A program made the translations under genes and the position numbers. Shown in pieces: positions 12,313 through 45,933 of a stretch of DNA of 64,000 bases. Under the pieces are notes generated by a model that did no database searches, was not told where the DNA came from, and was given only the letters and a program-made list of their open reading frames with translations. Location: positions 248,001 through 312,000 of IMG/VR virus record IMGVR_UViG_3300038424_000251, one strand, 5' to 3'. Each line of letters starts with the position of its first letter. The first letter of the stretch is position 1.

Positions 12313-12387
12313 GTTTATAAATATTTTTATTAAATTCAATCGCTTGACATTTTTTGTAAATGTGGTATATTTATTTTTACTTGATGT

Positions 12388-12791
12388 GGGCGTGTAATGG
12401 TATCGATTTATCATAACAGTCATACAGAGCATGTAGAGGATTGGTCATCTGTGGCCTCTTAAAAAACGAAGACTAAACTAAATGCTAATCTAAATCGATT
12501 GGTAAATGCTGACTTTGCTTTTGAGGTTAATACCTTTGAGGAAGTCGCTGTAGCGGCCTAGTTTCCGCTCCGTCATGTTGAGTGATTCTCACTAATTCAA
12601 TAATGGCGTAAAACCGTGAGAAAACTGCTTGTGGTTAAAATTACAGGACTGGTTAGATTGGGCAGTTCTCAATCTAGGTTTGATAATTTTCTCAAATTTT
12701 GATATTAAACCGAAGTTTAAAGTTGATAAACATGTAGTGCTGGATGGGTGTAATGGTAAAAACACGGGTTCAATTCCCGTCACGTCCACCA
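12388..12791 (+). ncRNA. ssrA: tmRNA
   Basis: GGGCGTG/CACGTCC-A-CCA acceptor with G3:U70, T-arm acggg-ttcaatt-cccgt, tag ORF 12484-12561 ANLNRLVNADFAFEVNTFEEVAVAA; promoter TTGACA ~12344. Confidence 0.93.
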
Positions 12792-14916: not shown

Positions 14917-15807
14917 ATGTTAAATCTACCTAGTAAAGTAGAGGGTGCTAACGTTCTGCTGTGTGGTATGGGTGGTGGTTTTGATATTTACGGAACATTA
15001 CCTATTTATTACACGTTAACAAGAATGGGCATGAATTGTTTCTTTCATAGTCATCAATTTTCCCATTTAGTTTCTTCAATAGTTGATGAGAATGAACATG
15101 ATAGTTCATCTTTTTTGCCTGAAATTCCACTTGCCAAATTTATAAAGAAACCTATTTATATTGATGGTAGAGTTGGTCCTTCTATTCTCCGAAAAAGTTA
15201 TGAAAAGATAATTGAAAAACATAATATTGACCATGTTATTATGGTTGATTGTGGTGTGGATTCTTTAATGCATGGTGATGAAGAGTTTAAAGGAACTGTA
15301 GGAGAAGATTTTGTGGCTCTTGCAGCTTTTAAAAACATTCCAATAAAAAAGTGGTTGGTTGTTTTTGGATTTGGTTGTGAAGTTGAAGAACAAATTTCTC
15401 ATTATCATGCGTTGGAAAATATGGCAGAATTGATAAAAGATGATGCATTTCTTGGTTCTTGTTCTCTTACTAAAAATATGTCATCATTTCAATTTTACAA
15501 ATCTGCCTATGAAAACATAGCAAATCTTCCAAATTATAGAAAAAGTCATATTCATCCAAGAATAATACCTTCCATAGAAGGATTGGTTGGAGAAAAATGG
15601 TATCAAAATGAGTCATCTATATATCCTGAAGTTTTAGTATTCTTATCCCCATTAATGGGTATCATGTGGTTTTTTGATGGAGATGTTGTTATTAAAAAGA
15701 ATAATATTATTCCTCTATTGGAGAATCATTTTACTTTTGCGGAGTCAATATCGACTATTGAGGAAATGTCAATTCCTACAAGAATGTCTCAATCAATACC
15801 GTATTAA
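14917..15807 (+). CDS. DUF1152-family protein
   Basis: GMGGGFDIY, VDCGVDSLMHGDE..GTVGED, LSPLMGIMWFFD. Confidence 0.8.
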   Translation: MLNLPSKVEGANVLLCGMGGGFDIYGTLPIYYTLTRMGMNCFFHSHQFSHLVSSIVDENEHDSSSFLPEIPLAKFIKKPIYIDGRVGPSILRKSYEKIIEKHNIDHVIMVDCGVDSLMHGDEEFKGTVGEDFVALAAFKNIPIKKWLVVFGFGCEVEEQISHYHALENMAELIKDDAFLGSCSLTKNMSSFQFYKSAYENIANLPNYRKSHIHPRIIPSIEGLVGEKWYQNESSIYPEVLVFLSPLMGIMWFFDGDVVIKKNNIIPLLENHFTFAESISTIEEMSIPTRMSQSIPY

Positions 15808-15846
15808 ATATGGGAATCAAAATTGTAGCTGGAATATAATGATATT

Positions 15847-17043
15847 ATGAATAATATAGAATTAATGGTAAAATCCCTCAAAGGTTTGTGGGTTGGTGAT
15901 TGTATTGGAAATGTTGGACAGTTTTATTACGCTCAAGACATATTAAAAGCGTTGGATGAAGGAATTGCTAAATTTGGGATAGATAACATAGACCCTATGG
16001 GAAAATCATTCCAATATTCCGATGACACGGAAGAGGCAATCGTTTTGGTAAATCACTTGTTTAACAACAAGAAAATTTTACAAGATAAGTTAGCGATGGA
16101 ATGGGCAACTAGATATTATACCCGTGACCCTGATGGTGAAATTTATGGTTACGGATTGATGACTAGGAAAGTGTTAAAAGATATTTATGAGGGTAAACCT
16201 TGGAGAGAAGCAAATTTAACATTTCAGAGAGGCGAAAGTCCATCAAACATTGATGTGTTAATAGGTGATATTGCGCATGGTAAATCTGTCAAAGATGCTT
16301 TATCGGAATTAAGAAAAGATGGTAGTCAAAAATTTCTTCCACAAAAAGTTGGTTCGTGTGGTAATGGGTCTGCTATGAGAATTCCTCCATTGGGTGCGTA
16401 TTTTTATCTTTCTCCAATTGAAGAAGTTGTTAAACAAGCAACGTTATCAGCAGAACCAACTCATTGTCATCCGGAAGGGATTGCTGGTGCTATTGCTATT
16501 GCATCATTAGCAAAGTGTATTTCGTTGTCTGAATGGGTATATAAATCGGAAAAGGTGTTGAATACAAATTATGTCACAGATATGGATACCAAGAAAATCT
16601 ATGATTACATCTTGGAATTTATTCCTGATAGCCAAGTAAAAAAAGGTATTCTTAAAGCAAAGGAACTTCCATTGGACATACCTTTGATGAAACTGATTGA
16701 AATTTTAGGAAATGGAACATATGTTACTTGTCAAGATACAGTTCCATTATGTGTATTTTTAACAATACAGGCATTATCCTTATATCCATTAGATGAAATG
16801 TATGAAAAGGTTTTAATTGATACTTGTAAATGTTTTGGTGATGTTGATACAAATTGTGCTATTGTTGGTGGTATGATTGGAATTATCAGTTCTCCACCTG
16901 AAAAATGGATAAGATATTGTCAACCAATGGAAGGAGTAATGGGTGACCCGTTGCCTGAAATTACAACACAAAGAAAAAGAACAGAATACAATGTTAATAA
17001 AGATGCTATAAAAGACATACTGAACAATATAAAAGAAAAATAA
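15847..17043 (+). CDS. ADP-ribosylglycohydrolase
   Basis: GDCIG, YSDDTE, SCGNGSAMR, GDVDTNCAIVG. Confidence 0.9.
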   Translation: MNNIELMVKSLKGLWVGDCIGNVGQFYYAQDILKALDEGIAKFGIDNIDPMGKSFQYSDDTEEAIVLVNHLFNNKKILQDKLAMEWATRYYTRDPDGEIYGYGLMTRKVLKDIYEGKPWREANLTFQRGESPSNIDVLIGDIAHGKSVKDALSELRKDGSQKFLPQKVGSCGNGSAMRIPPLGAYFYLSPIEEVVKQATLSAEPTHCHPEGIAGAIAIASLAKCISLSEWVYKSEKVLNTNYVTDMDTKKIYDYILEFIPDSQVKKGILKAKELPLDIPLMKLIEILGNGTYVTCQDTVPLCVFLTIQALSLYPLDEMYEKVLIDTCKCFGDVDTNCAIVGGMIGIISSPPEKWIRYCQPMEGVMGDPLPEITTQRKRTEYNVNKDAIKDILNNIKEK

Positions 17044-17046
17044 TTT

Positions 17047-17895
17047 ATGATTGGAGCAATTATAGGAGATATAGTCGGTTCACCCTACGAAGGTGCTGGT
17101 CTTAATTTTGTAGATGATAGAAATTTTTCTTTGTTTGATGGAAGAAATTCACGTTTTACGGATGATACCGTTCTTACTTGCGCTACTGCTGATGCAATTT
17201 TACAAACATTTACTATTAATGATTCGCCTATAGGTTATCCTCCATTTGCAGAATTATACAAAAAGTGGGCGTCAAAATATCCAAATAAAGGATATGGAAG
17301 TGGATTTTATGAATGGGTTAGTGAAGGCGGAATTACAGTAAAGAATAGTTATGCAAATGGATGTATGATGCGTTGTAGTCCTATTGGTTTATACTATGAC
17401 GATTTTAATATAGCAAAATCTGTAGCATTAGAAAGTATCAGAATGACACATAATTCTCCAGAATCGGCTCGTGGAATTCAATCAATTGTTTCTGCCATTT
17501 ATATGGCATTGCATGGAAAGTCAAAATTACAAATTAAATCATATGTGGAAAAGAGTTTTGGTCATATGTTGAATATGACTGTTGAAGAACTACGATTGTT
17601 ACCAAAAACTACTATCAGATGTGATGTAACCGCTCCTCAAGCATTAATATGCTTTATGGAATCCACGGATTATGAGTCAGCCATTCGTAATGCAGTTTAT
17701 ACCAAGGGTGATACTGATACTATTGCAGCCATTGCAGGTTCCATTGCCGAAGCATTTTATGGTGTTCGTTCTATTCCTCAATCCACAATTGATAAAGCAA
17801 AACAAAGGTTGACGCCTGAAATAATTGAGTTAATAAACAAATTTTATTATACTATTGGAGAATATCATGAATCTTATAAGGATTTTATAATCTGA
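17047..17895 (+). CDS. ADP-ribosylglycohydrolase
   Basis: GAIIGDIVGS, FTDDT, SYANGCMMR, GDTDTIAAIAG. Confidence 0.93.
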   Translation: MIGAIIGDIVGSPYEGAGLNFVDDRNFSLFDGRNSRFTDDTVLTCATADAILQTFTINDSPIGYPPFAELYKKWASKYPNKGYGSGFYEWVSEGGITVKNSYANGCMMRCSPIGLYYDDFNIAKSVALESIRMTHNSPESARGIQSIVSAIYMALHGKSKLQIKSYVEKSFGHMLNMTVEELRLLPKTTIRCDVTAPQALICFMESTDYESAIRNAVYTKGDTDTIAAIAGSIAEAFYGVRSIPQSTIDKAKQRLTPEIIELINKFYYTIGEYHESYKDFII

Positions 17896-18813: not shown

Positions 18814-18888
18814 GCTTCATTAGTTCAATGGCAAGAACAGGCGCCCCTAAACCGCCTTATAAGGGTTCAAGTCCCTTATGAAGCGCCA
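18814..18888 (+). tRNA. tRNA-like with CUA anticodon (amber suppressor-like)
   Basis: GCTTCAT/ATGAAGC-G-CCA; loop ccCTAaa; C31:C39 mismatch. Confidence 0.65.
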
Positions 18889-19406: not shown

Positions 19407-20502
19407 TCACGATTGAATTCGGAACGCTTTCGAATGAAATCATAATGGTTTGTGTTCATACGGTACGAAACGCCGAAAGGTAGTAGTTGTTCAGTCAACC
19501 GTATCATGTGTGCCGATGTAATGACGGCGTAAGTAAACAACACTATAGTTGTTCACACTATGAATATTTGTTCTTTGTCAGTAGATTTAACGGGGAGTAT
19601 CGTCTCCGTTGGAGTTGCCGCAAGGTGACTTCATAAAGATAAACCGTAGCAATACGGCCAAAGGGATGGCCCCTAACGGCCACTCACCAATCGCAAGGTT
19701 GGACACCGATACAACGAGCGAAATCTGTAAATATCATCCAAAAGATGGTGTTACACTTAAAGCTGGGATGGAAAATGGTATCTGAGGGTAACACTGTAAG
19801 ATATCTACTAACGATGCCGTCGAGCACTACCATCTGCCAAGCGCAACAGTGAGAGTTAAGATTTAAGCAAAGTAGTGAGGTTTGAGGCCAGCAACCAAAA
19901 GCTTCACTACAATCTGATAGAAACCGGCCAAGGCTCATACTGAGGACGGAATCTTGAAAGATGAATGAGTATCCGCAAGAGAAAGTTAGGACTTGTGTGG
20001 CATTTTGTATCTCCAAAAGGTATGAATCCACAGGCACCGCACAAGTTTGTTAGGTTGATATAGCTCAAAGTAGAGCAACTGTATTCAGCACAGTAGGCTG
20101 CCGGAGTCAAATCTGGCTATCTATTAAAAAACGCAAAGCCGGTGCCCGCGATGACTGAAAAAGTCTTAATTCTGGAGCCGCAAGGTAATTCAGACAACCG
20201 TAGCTCGCAAGGTGAAAGTTGTTCGTGTTGAAGGTAACGGAGAGGTTAGCCCCTCTTACTGCCCGCAAGGCAGACGTTAAATGAGACGCGGAATAGGTTG
20301 TCGTCAGGTTGGAAATGCCACCAACTAAATCAGGCAGACTTACCGGATAAACCATACGTTGTCCCGCAACGGTGGATTTGGATGAAGAGGAAGACTATCC
20401 GCAAGGTAGTGATAATCTTAGAAGGCCGGTACACAATGAGGTATTCTCACTCAAAGTAAATCACAAAATTGTCGAGATAGACCTTCGGGGAACGTTTCGT
20501 GA
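19407..20502 (+). ncRNA. giant structured ncRNA, GOLLD-like
   Basis: ~1.1 kb, GC-richer, no + strand ORF, many GCAA/GAAA tetraloop hairpins, promoter 19375, end pairing tcacga/tcgtga, terminator after it, located among tRNAs; family name is from recall. Confidence 0.7.
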
Positions 20503-26532: not shown

Positions 26533-26597
26533 AGATTCAGTAGTTTAGTGGTAGAACAGTCAAATGACAAACGCTGGCTCTAATCCAGTCTGAATCT
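26533..26597 (+). ncRNA. degenerate tRNA-like RNA
   Basis: agattca/tgaatct, D arm, stub gtca-aa-tgac, last arm gctgg-ctctaat-ccagt; no CCA. Confidence 0.5.
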
Positions 26598-45358: not shown

Positions 45359-45447
45359 GCTACCATGCTGGAATTGGCATACAGACCAGCCTGAGAAGTT
45401 GGGGTCCGTAATTGGACTTGTGGGTTCGAATCCCTCTGGTAGCACCA
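45359..45447 (+). tRNA. tRNA-Leu(GAG)
   Basis: ccagc-ctGAGaa-gttgg, long arm. Confidence 0.9.
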
Positions 45448-45567
45448 ATTTTATATAGTGAATTGTGTCAATAAAATTTTGTTATTGACACGATTTTTGT
45501 TTTAAGGCTTGACATTTTTATGTATTTGATTTATATTTATAGATAAAGAGTTCTTTGAAATTTTTTT

Positions 45568-45847
45568 GTGACATAAGTGACCTTACGCTAACCTAAATGT
45601 GTTAGAGGAAGTTCGCGGCATCACAGCAGATGATTGGGAGAATCAGTAAATGTTGCAACCGAGCCGTAGCCAGAGAAAAACTGGTAGTGAGCCTTGAAAG
45701 GGGTTAATCGGTATGATTCGTTAATACCACAAATTAGATGCAAGTGCAAATAGGGACAAGAGTAGTGCTGCTCGTTATAAAGTCTGGGTAATAGCACGCT
45801 TAGAGAAATGTAAGGATAAAACAGAACCGCGGCTATGTCTGTGTCAT
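45568..45847 (+). ncRNA. rnpB: RNase P RNA (compact, divergent)
   Basis: P1 gtgacata/tgtgtcat, P2 ccttac/gtaagg, P3, GAGGAAGTTCGCGG pairing with ACAGAACCGCGGCT (P4, bulged U), GCAAG..CAAATAGG. Confidence 0.82.
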
Positions 45848-45857
45848 AAATTTTATT

Positions 45858-45933
45858 GGGGTCTTAGCTCAATTGGTAGAGCGTCTCAATGGCATTGAGA
45901 AGGTCAGGGGTTCGAATCCCCTAGGCTCCACCA
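45858..45933 (+). tRNA. tRNA-Ala(GGC)
   Basis: canonical. Confidence 0.95.

What the first reader, a model, noticed from the sequence alone, without database searches (positions are those of the whole stretch)
45568..45847. Phage-encoded compact RNase P RNA inside the tRNA array
Seen: P1, P2, P3 and the P4 pseudoknot in canonical order, with altered P4 (GUUCGCGG/CCGCGGC rather than GUCCGGG/CCCGGC). It is only ~280 nt; P18 and P19 appear absent (gcttagagaaat runs directly into P2'). It has its own promoter (~45509). Inference: the phage matures its own polycistronic tRNAs and odd tRNA mimics.
Basis: partly seen in the sequence, partly recalled or inferred. Interest (0 to 1): 0.72.

Follow-up and report, generated by a model that had tools for sequence, protein, structure and literature searches.

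The report
Phage-encoded minimal RNase P ribozyme gene
A 365 kb peat-soil phage carries, inside its tRNA gene array, its own stripped-down copy of the RNase P ribozyme (the RNA enzyme that trims tRNA precursors); it keeps the whole catalytic half, lacks the substrate-recognition half, and belongs to a conserved family found in the tRNA arrays of other large phages.

Summary
Window 45566-45850 (+) matches Rfam bacterial class A RNase P over the full model (44.1 bits, E 1.3e-12), below the curated cut-off of 100.

The P6 pseudoknot and P15-P17 with an invariant L15 GGU are present. The RNA is compact mainly because the specificity domain (P8-P14, CR-II/CR-III) is gone, replaced by one stem carrying about 70 nt of lineage-specific sequence. 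And the element belongs to a family: at least 36 distinct sequences on viral and metagenomic contigs, 210-400 nt long.

All helices covary (95-97% paired vs 75% in shuffles, 0/500). The region between the P5 strands is only 41-61 nt in 15 of 27 variants scored. Six more phage tRNA arrays and one Acidobacteriota-MAG contig carry a sister lineage with canonical P4. Peat metatranscriptome contigs of close relatives cover exactly the predicted RNA. The phage has 53 tRNA genes, a tmRNA and no RnpA.

Most likely it is a working, catalytic-domain-only RNase P RNA that uses host RnpA. Catalysis is untested. I found no prior report.

The parts
45509..45537 (+). Sigma-70-type promoter: -35 TTGACA (45509-14), 17-nt spacer, -10 TATATT (45532-37). 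Predicted transcription start near 45544.
   Evidence: 11 of 12 consensus positions. The extended -35 box CTTGACATTTTT recurs 50 times in the window, almost all on the + strand, including upstream of the tmRNA and tRNA clusters. The same -35/-10 arrangement is conserved upstream of relatives.
45549..45558 (+). Conserved leader motif AGTTCTTTGA, between the predicted start site and P1. Role unknown.
   Evidence: The shorter core GTTCTTT occurs upstream of the RNA in 14 of 27 family members scored. The full 10-mer has only one exact + strand copy in the window.
45566..45850 (+). The mini RNase P RNA gene as a whole (P1 to P1, with its short extension).
   Evidence: RF00010 full-length match at 45569-45850. 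Metatranscriptome contigs of relatives begin at 45566/45567 and end at 45846.
45569..45605 (+). 5' strands of P1 (45569-75) and P2 (45581-86), and the P3 hairpin (45588-92 / 45601-05).
   Evidence: P1 and P2 differ in sequence but stay complementary in nearly every lineage.
45605..45619 (+). CR-I, GAGGAAGUUCGCGGC. The P4 5' strand is 45610-18, with bulged U45613.
   Evidence: GAGGAA, UC and GG are invariant across the family.
45619..45637 (+). P5 5' strand (45619-22), P6 5' strand CAGCA (45624-28), P7 5' strand (45629-37).
   Evidence: covariation.
45640..45719 (+). S-slot: a stem (GAAUC 45640-44 / GAUUC 45715-19) enclosing a 70-nt lineage-specific insert (45645-45714). It sits where the S-domain (P8-P14) would be.
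   Evidence: not alignable to CR-II/CR-III. Close relatives carry unrelated sequence at this position.
45720..45743 (+). Conserved linker GUUAAUA (45720-26), P7 3' strand (45727-36), P5 3' strand GAUG (45737-40), J5/15 CAA.
45744..45797 (+). The P15-P16-P17 module: P15 GUGC/GCAC (45744-47 / 45794-97); J15/16 AAAUAG; P16 GGAC/GUCU (45754-57 / 45782-85); P17 GAG/CUC (45760-62 / 45771-73), whose loop supplies the P6 3' strand UGCUG (45766-70); L15 GGGU (45786-89), carrying the CCA-binding GGU.
   Evidence: GGU is invariant in all aligned members.
45798..45835 (+). J15/2 (GCUUAGAGAAAUG), which runs on directly with no P18; P2 3' strand (45810-15); CR-V ACAGAACC (45821-28); P4 3' strand (45827-34).
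   Evidence: P18 block of 24 positions aligns to 0 nt.
45840..45846 (+). P1 3' strand, UGUGUCA.
45858..45933 (+). tRNA-Ala(GGC), encoding CCA. It starts 11 nt after the core P1 and 7 nt after the extended P1, with no terminator between, so it is probably co-transcribed. RNase P cleavage at its 5' end would create the ribozyme's 3' end.
   Evidence: A tRNA lies 2-7 nt after P1 in 14 of 28 variants.
45359..45447 (+). Upstream tRNA-Leu(GAG), followed by a terminator-like hairpin at 45460-96. The order tRNA-Leu, RNase P RNA, tRNA-Ala is conserved in the window's clade.

Best explanation
Window 45566-45850 (+) is a phage gene for an RNase P RNA of bacterial class A ancestry, reduced to its catalytic domain.

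What it keeps: P1-P5, the P4 and P6 pseudoknots, P7, P15-P17 with the L15 GGU, the J18/2 block AGAGAAAUG, and CR-I and CR-V.

What it lacks: the specificity domain (replaced by one stem with a 70-nt lineage-specific insert) and P18.

Proposed mechanism (inferred):
1. It is transcribed from its own phage promoter together with the downstream tRNA-Ala.
2. Its 3' end is released by RNase P cleavage at the 5' end of that tRNA.
3. The phage has no rnpA, so it most likely assembles with the host RnpA protein.
4. It removes the 5' leaders from the phage's 53 pre-tRNAs, and probably from the tmRNA precursor.
5. It recognises substrates through the acceptor stem, through 3'-CCA pairing with the L15 GGU, and through the N-1 contact, rather than through the T-loop/S-domain contact.
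6. This adds to or replaces host RNase P capacity while the phage floods the cell with its own tRNAs.

Shown here: homology, conserved structure, family distribution, and the presence of close relatives in RNA libraries with matching ends.
Inferred only: catalysis, the protein partner, and the benefit to the phage.
For: Homology:
- Full-length RF00010 match, E 1.3e-12 and 2.7e-13.
- Relatives score 33-65 bits against the same model.

Structure:
- P2-P6 on 22 variants: 94.8% of cells paired vs 73.2% in shuffles, 0/500.
- Full core including P4, P6, P7 and P15-P17 on 10 diverse sequences: 96.7% vs 74.6%, with 26 of 37 pairs showing compensatory double changes; slid controls 29-49%.
- 36 distinct sequences aligned by the model: 95.0% vs 74.9%.
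- P1 and P2 differ in sequence in nearly every lineage yet stay complementary.
- Invariant positions are those of the catalytic core: GAGGAA..UC..GG, the AA of J5/15 (GCAA or CUAA), L15 GGU, AGA.AAAUG and ACAGAACC.

Substrate match:
- At least 40 of 42 phage tRNA genes encode CCA, and most have U at -1.

Context:
- A single copy, between tRNAs, in a 365 kb phage with 53 tRNAs and a tmRNA.
- Among 17 viral contigs picked by a canonical CR-I/CR-V spacing pattern, the 6 confirmed by model R1 are exactly the 6 with tRNA arrays.

Expression:
- Peat metatranscriptome contigs (90-99% identical relatives) cover 45566/7-45846 only, not the promoter or flanks.

Feasibility, from the literature:
[quoted passage not shown] Its efficiency depends on a P6-like pairing and not on P18 (PMC5839562).
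Against: - The Rfam score is far below the gathering cut-off (44 vs 100 bits).
- With no recognisable S-domain, activity could be weak, or could need an unknown cofactor.
- No rnpA or other RNase P protein was found in the phage (only PF00825 was searched), and the host is unknown.
- The RNA-library evidence comes from assembled contigs of relatives, not from this exact phage, and DNA carry-over cannot be formally excluded.
- Single-sequence folding is no more stable than shuffled controls (z = -0.8). This is expected for a pseudoknotted RNA but gives no support.
- No biochemical test was possible.
Confidence: 0.75

Rival explanations
1. It is a real ribozyme with retargeted specificity. The catalytic core is used on substrates other than, or in addition to, ordinary pre-tRNAs (for example the tmRNA or GOLLD precursors, phage mRNAs or host RNAs). 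The hypervariable S-slot acts as a swappable specificity or regulatory module.
For: The S-slot is the only part that changes completely between otherwise near-identical genes: L016, L095 and L153, and the metatranscriptome variants. The phage also encodes a tmRNA and a GOLLD RNA. Some divergent members have no tRNA gene in the locus DNA held (L130, L137, L158, L171).
Against: 15 of 27 members have only a 10-14-nt hairpin in the slot, so the family's basic function cannot depend on slot content. The conserved L15 GGU, the CCA-encoding tRNAs and the tight linkage to tRNA genes all point to pre-tRNAs.
Confidence: 0.1
2. It is a non-catalytic decoy or sponge. The RNA mimics host RNase P RNA in order to capture host RnpA (or a host or defence factor that binds or attacks RNase P RNA), and so reprograms or protects tRNA processing without cleaving anything itself.
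For: No phage rnpA. The S-domain is dispensable for RnpA binding (my own knowledge of the Thermotoga maritima holoenzyme structure). Two ADP-ribosylglycohydrolase genes lie in the same ncRNA-rich region, and an ADP-ribosyltransferase toxin that modifies structured RNAs is known (PMC12340436 abstract).
Against: A decoy would not need strict conservation of the active-site elements: the P4 geometry with its bulged U, the P6 pseudoknot, J5/15, and the L15 GGU that pairs with substrate CCA.
Confidence: 0.08
3. It is a decaying, non-functional remnant of a host rnpB gene that was picked up together with tRNA genes.
For: It is shortened and scores poorly against Rfam. One contig (L134) carries a second copy that looks degenerate.
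Against: Compensatory changes maintain every helix across at least 36 distinct sequences in several phage lineages. The promoter is conserved. Relatives are present in RNA libraries with defined ends. The altered-P4 CR-V variant was not found in any of 185,579 species genomes.
Confidence: 0.03

Closest known systems
Bacterial class A RNase P RNA (Rfam RF00010; E. coli M1 RNA type)
   Same: P1-P5; the P4 pseudoknot with its bulged U; the P6 pseudoknot between J5/7 and the P17 loop; P15-P16-P17 with L15 GGU for 3'-CCA; the J18/2 AGAUAAAUG-type block; CR-I and CR-V. It is the best Rfam family for the window.
   Different: No S-domain (P8-P14, CR-II/CR-III); no P18 in the window's copy; 210-290 nt in most members, against a 367-position Rfam consensus; scores of 33-65 bits against a cut-off of 100; encoded by phages inside tRNA arrays rather than as a single chromosomal rnpB.
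[quoted passage not shown]
   Same: A natural RNase P RNA that keeps the catalytic domain but lacks most of the specificity domain, with the S-domain position ending in a small stem-loop. It too was missed by the existing Rfam models of its time.
   Different: Type T has an archaeal C-domain with a 3-bp P2, a shortened P15 and a 2-nt P5/P15 linker, and works with archaeal proteins. The phage RNA has a bacterial class A C-domain (6-bp P2, P6/P16/P17, L15 GGU, 3-nt CAA linker) and lives in a bacterial-type setting (sigma-70 promoters, a bacterial tmRNA). This looks like convergent reduction, not shared descent.
Engineered C-domain-only E. coli RNase P RNA ('Eco CP RPR'; PMC5839562)
   Same: [quoted passage not shown] Efficiency depends on a P6-type pairing, and P18 is dispensable. 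Both points match what the phage family conserves (P6) and what it can drop (P18).
   Different: That is a laboratory deletion construct with reduced efficiency. The phage RNAs are natural, evolutionarily maintained versions, with a conserved GUUAAUA linker and a closing stem at the deletion point.
Diverged RNase P RNAs of CPR bacteria (PMC8172020)
   Same: Bacterial RNase P RNAs that fall below Rfam thresholds and lack P12, P13, P14 and P18, and in some cases the UGG/GGU motif.
   Different: Those are each cell's only rnpB and keep at least part of the S-domain. The phage RNAs lack all of it, keep the GGU, and are accessory copies on phage or mobile tRNA arrays. One MAG has both a normal copy (321 bits) and a mini copy (65.5 bits).

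Membership tests
Bacterial RNase P RNA class A (RF00010) | Covariance-model score at or above Rfam's gathering threshold (100 bits) | tested here: not met
   44.1 bits, though full-length (1-367) with E 1.3e-12 and 2.7e-13. Relatives score 33-65 bits.
Bacterial RNase P RNA class A (RF00010) | CR-I and CR-V forming the P4 pseudoknot with a bulged U | tested here: met
   45610-18 pairs with 45827-34. The pairs form in 100% of cells, and 4 of 8 pairs show compensatory changes across the family.
Bacterial RNase P RNA class A (RF00010) | Class A-specific P6 pseudoknot plus P15-P16-P17, with GGU in L15 | tested here: met
   P6 pairs in 98-100% of cells, and 4 of 5 pairs covary. P15, P16 and P17 covary. 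GGU is invariant.
Bacterial RNase P RNA class A (RF00010) | Specificity domain (P8-P14) with CR-II/CR-III | tested here: not met
   All S-domain consensus positions are skipped in the Infernal alignments. The region between the P5 strands is 41-61 nt in 15 of 27 members and 114 nt in the window.
Bacterial RNase P RNA class A (RF00010) | P18 hairpin | tested here: not met
   The 24-position model block aligns to 0 nt in the window. P18-like tetraloop hairpins are present in many relatives.
Bacterial RNase P RNA class A (RF00010) | Site-specific 5' cleavage of pre-tRNA, stimulated by RnpA | not testable with these tools
   No PF00825 (rnpA) match in the phage genome. The RNA-protein complex job was not folded.
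[quoted passage not shown] | Catalytic domain retained and most of the S-domain absent | tested here: met
   compared with the description in PMC3579882.
[quoted passage not shown] | Archaeal-type C-domain: 3-bp P2, shortened P15, 2-nt P5/P15 linker | tested here: not met
   P2 is 6 bp, the P5/P15 linker is CAA (3 nt), and the bacterial P6/P16/P17 are present.
[quoted passage not shown] | Match to the type T covariance model | tested here: inconclusive
   cmscan reports only the best family in the clan. That was class A for the window and RF00373 (archaeal) for three minimal relatives at 27-38 bits. No type T hit was listed.

The most novel reading that the evidence does not exclude
Large phages and mobile tRNA arrays carry a previously unrecognised natural class of bacterial-type, catalytic-domain-only RNase P ribozymes. 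These are embedded in the tRNA polycistron and cut out of it by the same tRNA-processing reactions they catalyse. They work without any T-loop-reading domain. Their hypervariable slot, and a possible head-to-tail (circular) RNA form, would be lineage-specific add-ons that tune stability or specificity.
Probability: 0.3. Interest if true: 0.9.

Novelty: new variant of a known kind. Interest (0 to 1): 0.8.

Why it matters
As far as I know, RNase P RNA has so far been treated as a gene of cells and organelles only. A virus-encoded copy would add a ribozyme to the list of translation-related functions that huge phages carry (tRNAs, tmRNA and so on).

It also provides dozens of natural bacterial-type RNase P RNAs of 210-250 nt with no specificity domain. 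Until now that state was known only from laboratory deletions and from one archaeal family.

These natural minimal forms make an old question directly testable: how much of RNase P is needed for accurate pre-tRNA cleavage in vivo, and which compensating features make it work. Candidate features are P6, the conserved GUUAAUA linker, CCA-encoding substrates and U at -1.

Practically, current Rfam thresholds miss all of these genes, so they go unannotated in phage and metagenome records.

Tried and rejected
- Default Rfam scan at gathering thresholds: no RNase P hit. The hit appears only with permissive thresholds.
- Single-sequence MFE folding: z = -0.8, uninformative for a pseudoknotted RNA.
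- blastn of the element against 50,697 GenBank phage records: no match.
- The 15-mer CR-I pattern alone: mostly chance hits, so I filtered for the paired CR-V motif.
- Genome-collection scan for the altered-P4 CR-V variant: 2 hits, both chance matches in coding-like DNA with no Rfam signal.
I replaced them with a CR-I-to-CR-V core model, R1.
- R1 does not detect a canonical bacterial RNase P RNA, so it cannot be used to place the family phylogenetically among bacterial rnpB genes.
- R1 on 151 Bacteroidota genomes: nothing found.
- RNA-protein complex prediction (ribozyme + pre-tRNA + T. maritima RnpA): not folded by the tool, so it is no evidence either way.
- Testing whether the large slot inserts are cryptic S-domains: rejected. 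Even the 181-nt insert of L157 is skipped by the class A model.
- Nine literature searches and direct reading of the huge-phage survey: no report of a phage-encoded RNase P RNA. The library lacks most subscription journals, so a prior report elsewhere cannot be excluded.
- The idea that the contig is cellular: rejected. It is an IMG/VR record rated 100% complete by CheckV, with a baseplate gene and typical phage accessory genes.

Full report
**1. What is at the coordinates**

The window is part of a 365,299-bp IMG/VR virus record that CheckV rates as complete. The genome is 33% GC and has 53 tRNA genes covering all 20 amino acids plus a CUA suppressor, and one tmRNA. The window also holds a GOLLD RNA and a tail baseplate gene.

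The flagged stretch lies between tRNA-Leu(GAG) (45359-45447) and tRNA-Ala(GGC) (45858-45933). It overlaps no credible ORF.

Rfam at curated thresholds reports no RNase P. A permissive scan of 45440-45860 gives one strong hit: RNaseP_bact_a (RF00010), 45569-45850, covering model positions 1-367, 44.1 bits, E 1.3e-12. The same hit against the whole phage genome has E 2.7e-13 and is the only one.

The alignment shows P1, P2 and P3; CR-I (GAGGAAGUUCGCGGC); P5 and P7; P15-P17 with GGGUA; the block UUAGAGAAAUG; and CR-V (ACAGAACCGCGGCUA). P18 aligns to nothing, and all S-domain consensus positions are skipped.

It pairs A-U, G-C, U.G, [U], C-G, G-C, C-G, G-C, G-C. That is a fully compensated version of the canonical helix with the same geometry, and the bulged U is kept.

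The promoter TTGACA-17-TATATT (45509-37) matches 11 of 12 consensus positions. It carries the phage's recurrent extended -35 box.

**2. It is a family, and the structure is under selection**

Scans of viral contigs, metagenomes and species genomes with motif patterns, filtered for paired CR-I/CR-V, gave 28 unique variants.

- On a MAFFT alignment of 22 variants, RNAalifold found the two pseudoknots by itself: P4, and a helix between J5/7 and the loop of the 3' hairpin, which is P6, a class A hallmark.
- Pair counts for P2-P6: 94.8% paired vs 73.2% in shuffles (0/500), 21 of 28 pairs with changes on both sides, slid controls 31-52%.
- On a clean alignment of 10 diverse members, the whole core (P4, P5, P6, P7, slot stem, P15, P16, P17) gives 96.7% vs 74.6%, with 26 of 37 pairs showing double changes.
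- A covariance model of the CR-I-to-CR-V core (R1) recovers every member. The window, which was not in the seed, scores 70.6 bits (E 4e-16).
- On the resulting alignment of 36 distinct sequences the figures are 95.0% vs 74.9%. That alignment leans towards the model's structure.
- P1 and P2 have different, complementary sequences in almost every lineage.
- The invariant columns are those of the catalytic core, including the L15 GGU.

**3. Why the RNA is small**

The region between the two P5 strands would normally hold the whole S-domain. It is 41-61 nt in 15 of 27 variants. That leaves room only for J5/7, P7, a 3-5-bp hairpin (for example GGG-GAAA-CCC) and a conserved GUUAAUA linker.

Total P1-to-P1 sizes run from about 210 to about 397 nt. 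The window has 114 nt between the P5 strands, because a 70-nt insert sits in that hairpin.

The inserts are unrelated to one another. L016, L095 and L153 have nearly identical catalytic domains, but their slots hold about 100 nt, a 7-nt loop and about 60 nt respectively.

Even the largest insert (181 nt, L157) is not alignable to the class A S-domain.

P18-like tetraloop hairpins are present in many members but absent from the window and from the smallest forms.

**4. Distribution**

- The altered-P4 lineage occurs on contigs of up to 306-488 kb.
- The exact CR-V variant is found in none of 185,579 species genomes, apart from two chance matches.
- R1 on 151 Acidobacteriota genomes found one hit, on a 1.5-kb contig made of 13 back-to-back tRNA genes. 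A 209-nt mini RNase P RNA sits directly between two of those tRNAs. It has the canonical P4 and scores 65.5 bits against RF00010. The same MAG has a normal rnpB (321 bits) elsewhere.
- A spacing-constrained scan for canonical CR-I/CR-V in viral contigs gave 17 loci. R1 confirmed 6, on contigs of 19-191 kb. These are exactly the 6 with tRNA arrays; the other 11 have no tRNA at all.
- In 14 of 28 variants a tRNA, usually tRNA-Ala, begins 2-7 nt after P1.
- A few divergent members show no tRNA in the DNA held for the locus.

**5. Expression**

The phage occurs in at least 24 peat and wetland metagenome runs.

In two peat metatranscriptomes, assembled contigs 90-99% identical to the window cover 45566/7-45846 only. 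They do not cover the promoter, the leader or the spacer. They carry other sequences in the S-slot, and one also differs in the P3 loop. This fits a stable, processed RNA from close relatives.

It is not proof for this phage, and DNA carry-over cannot be excluded.

One 359-nt contig joins 45846 to 45567 through 12 nt, head to tail. This is unexplained. It could be a circular RNA, an RT template switch across P1, or tandem gene copies.

**6. Mechanism**

The retained elements are those that form the active site and bind the acceptor end of the substrate.

The substrates fit. At least 40 of 42 tRNA genes in the window encode CCA, the partner of the L15 GGU, and most have U at -1. The proposed -1/A248 contact is described in PMC6582537.

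[quoted passage not shown] That work also found that a P6-type pairing matters for efficiency and that P18 does not (PMC5839562). Archaeal type T RNAs also lack most of the S-domain (PMC3579882).

The phage has no rnpA, so the host protein is the likely partner.

There is no terminator between the ribozyme and tRNA-Ala, which implies co-transcription. RNase P cleavage at the tRNA 5' end would then define the ribozyme's 3' end.

All of this section is inference. No cleavage assay was possible.

**7. Comparison and novelty**

The element works like, and descends from, bacterial class A RNase P RNA. It fails two of that family's defining features (S-domain, P18) and the curated score cut-off.

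It parallels archaeal type T in what is missing, but it has a bacterial catalytic domain.

I found no report of a phage-encoded RNase P RNA in nine full-text searches or in the main huge-phage survey, which mentions tmRNAs but not RNase P. The library is incomplete, so an earlier report cannot be ruled out.

I classify it as a new variant of a known kind.

**8. Verdict**

- Observation: confirmed.
The main loss is the S-domain, and P4 has canonical geometry.
- Confidence that this is an RNase P RNA homologue maintained by selection: about 0.93.
- Confidence that it acts as the phage's tRNA 5'-processing ribozyme: about 0.75.

Noticed in passing
window 19988-20453 (+): A GOLLD RNA (165.5 bits, above the gathering score of 150) sits within the phage's tRNA-rich region. 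GOLLD is known to be associated with phages and tRNA clusters (PMC6582537).
   Followed up: no
window 12388-12791 (+): A phage-encoded tmRNA (103.6 bits; tag ANLNRLVNADFAFEVNTFEEVAVAA), with the phage promoter box at 12343.
   Followed up: no
window 18814-18888 (+): A tRNA with a CUA anticodon (ARAGORN calls it 'Pyl'), that is, an amber suppressor. It may point to stop-codon recoding in part of the phage genome.
   Followed up: no
window 14917-17895 (+): A DUF1152 gene followed by two adjacent ADP-ribosylglycohydrolase genes, next to the ncRNA region. These could conceivably reverse ADP-ribosylation of structured RNAs by host toxins.
   Followed up: no
window-wide, e.g. 12343, 20508, 25388, 45508: The extended -35 box CTTGACATTT[C/T]T occurs 50 times (23 expected), almost always on the + strand. 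It is probably the phage's main promoter class.
   Followed up: partly
window 45549-45558; upstream regions of L012, L016, L142, L155, L157 and L167: The conserved motif AGTTCTTTGA lies in the predicted 5' leader of the ribozyme transcript. In L148 and L161 a similar motif lies upstream of the promoter instead. Its function is unknown.
   Followed up: partly
window 45566-45846, from metatranscriptome run X25: A 359-nt RNA-library contig joins the 3' end (45846) to the 5' end (45567) through CATATGAGATTA, head to tail. It could be a circular RNA, an RT template switch or tandem gene copies. It is a single low-depth contig.
   Followed up: partly
L134:1905-2037 (-), on a 488-kb viral contig: A second RNase P-like copy lies about 350 nt downstream of the intact one. 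It keeps P5-P17 and AGAGAAAUG but has no CR-I, has a local hairpin in place of the P4 3' strand, and runs directly into a tRNA.
   Followed up: partly
L188:1-1542 (contig of an Acidobacteriota MAG): Thirteen tRNA genes are packed back to back, without encoded CCA, and a 209-nt mini RNase P RNA with canonical P4 sits at 584-792 between tRNA-Arg and tRNA-Leu. The MAG also has a normal rnpB. This could be a mis-binned phage fragment or a hint about the host.
   Followed up: partly
window 26534-26597 (+): A 64-nt tRNA-like hit (Rfam 45.3 bits) that ARAGORN does not call and that lacks an encoded CCA.
   Followed up: no
window tRNA genes, 18814-47096: The tRNA genes share a CCAATT trailer and a leader ending in ..TTAAT, which suggests uniform processing signals across the array.
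   Followed up: partly
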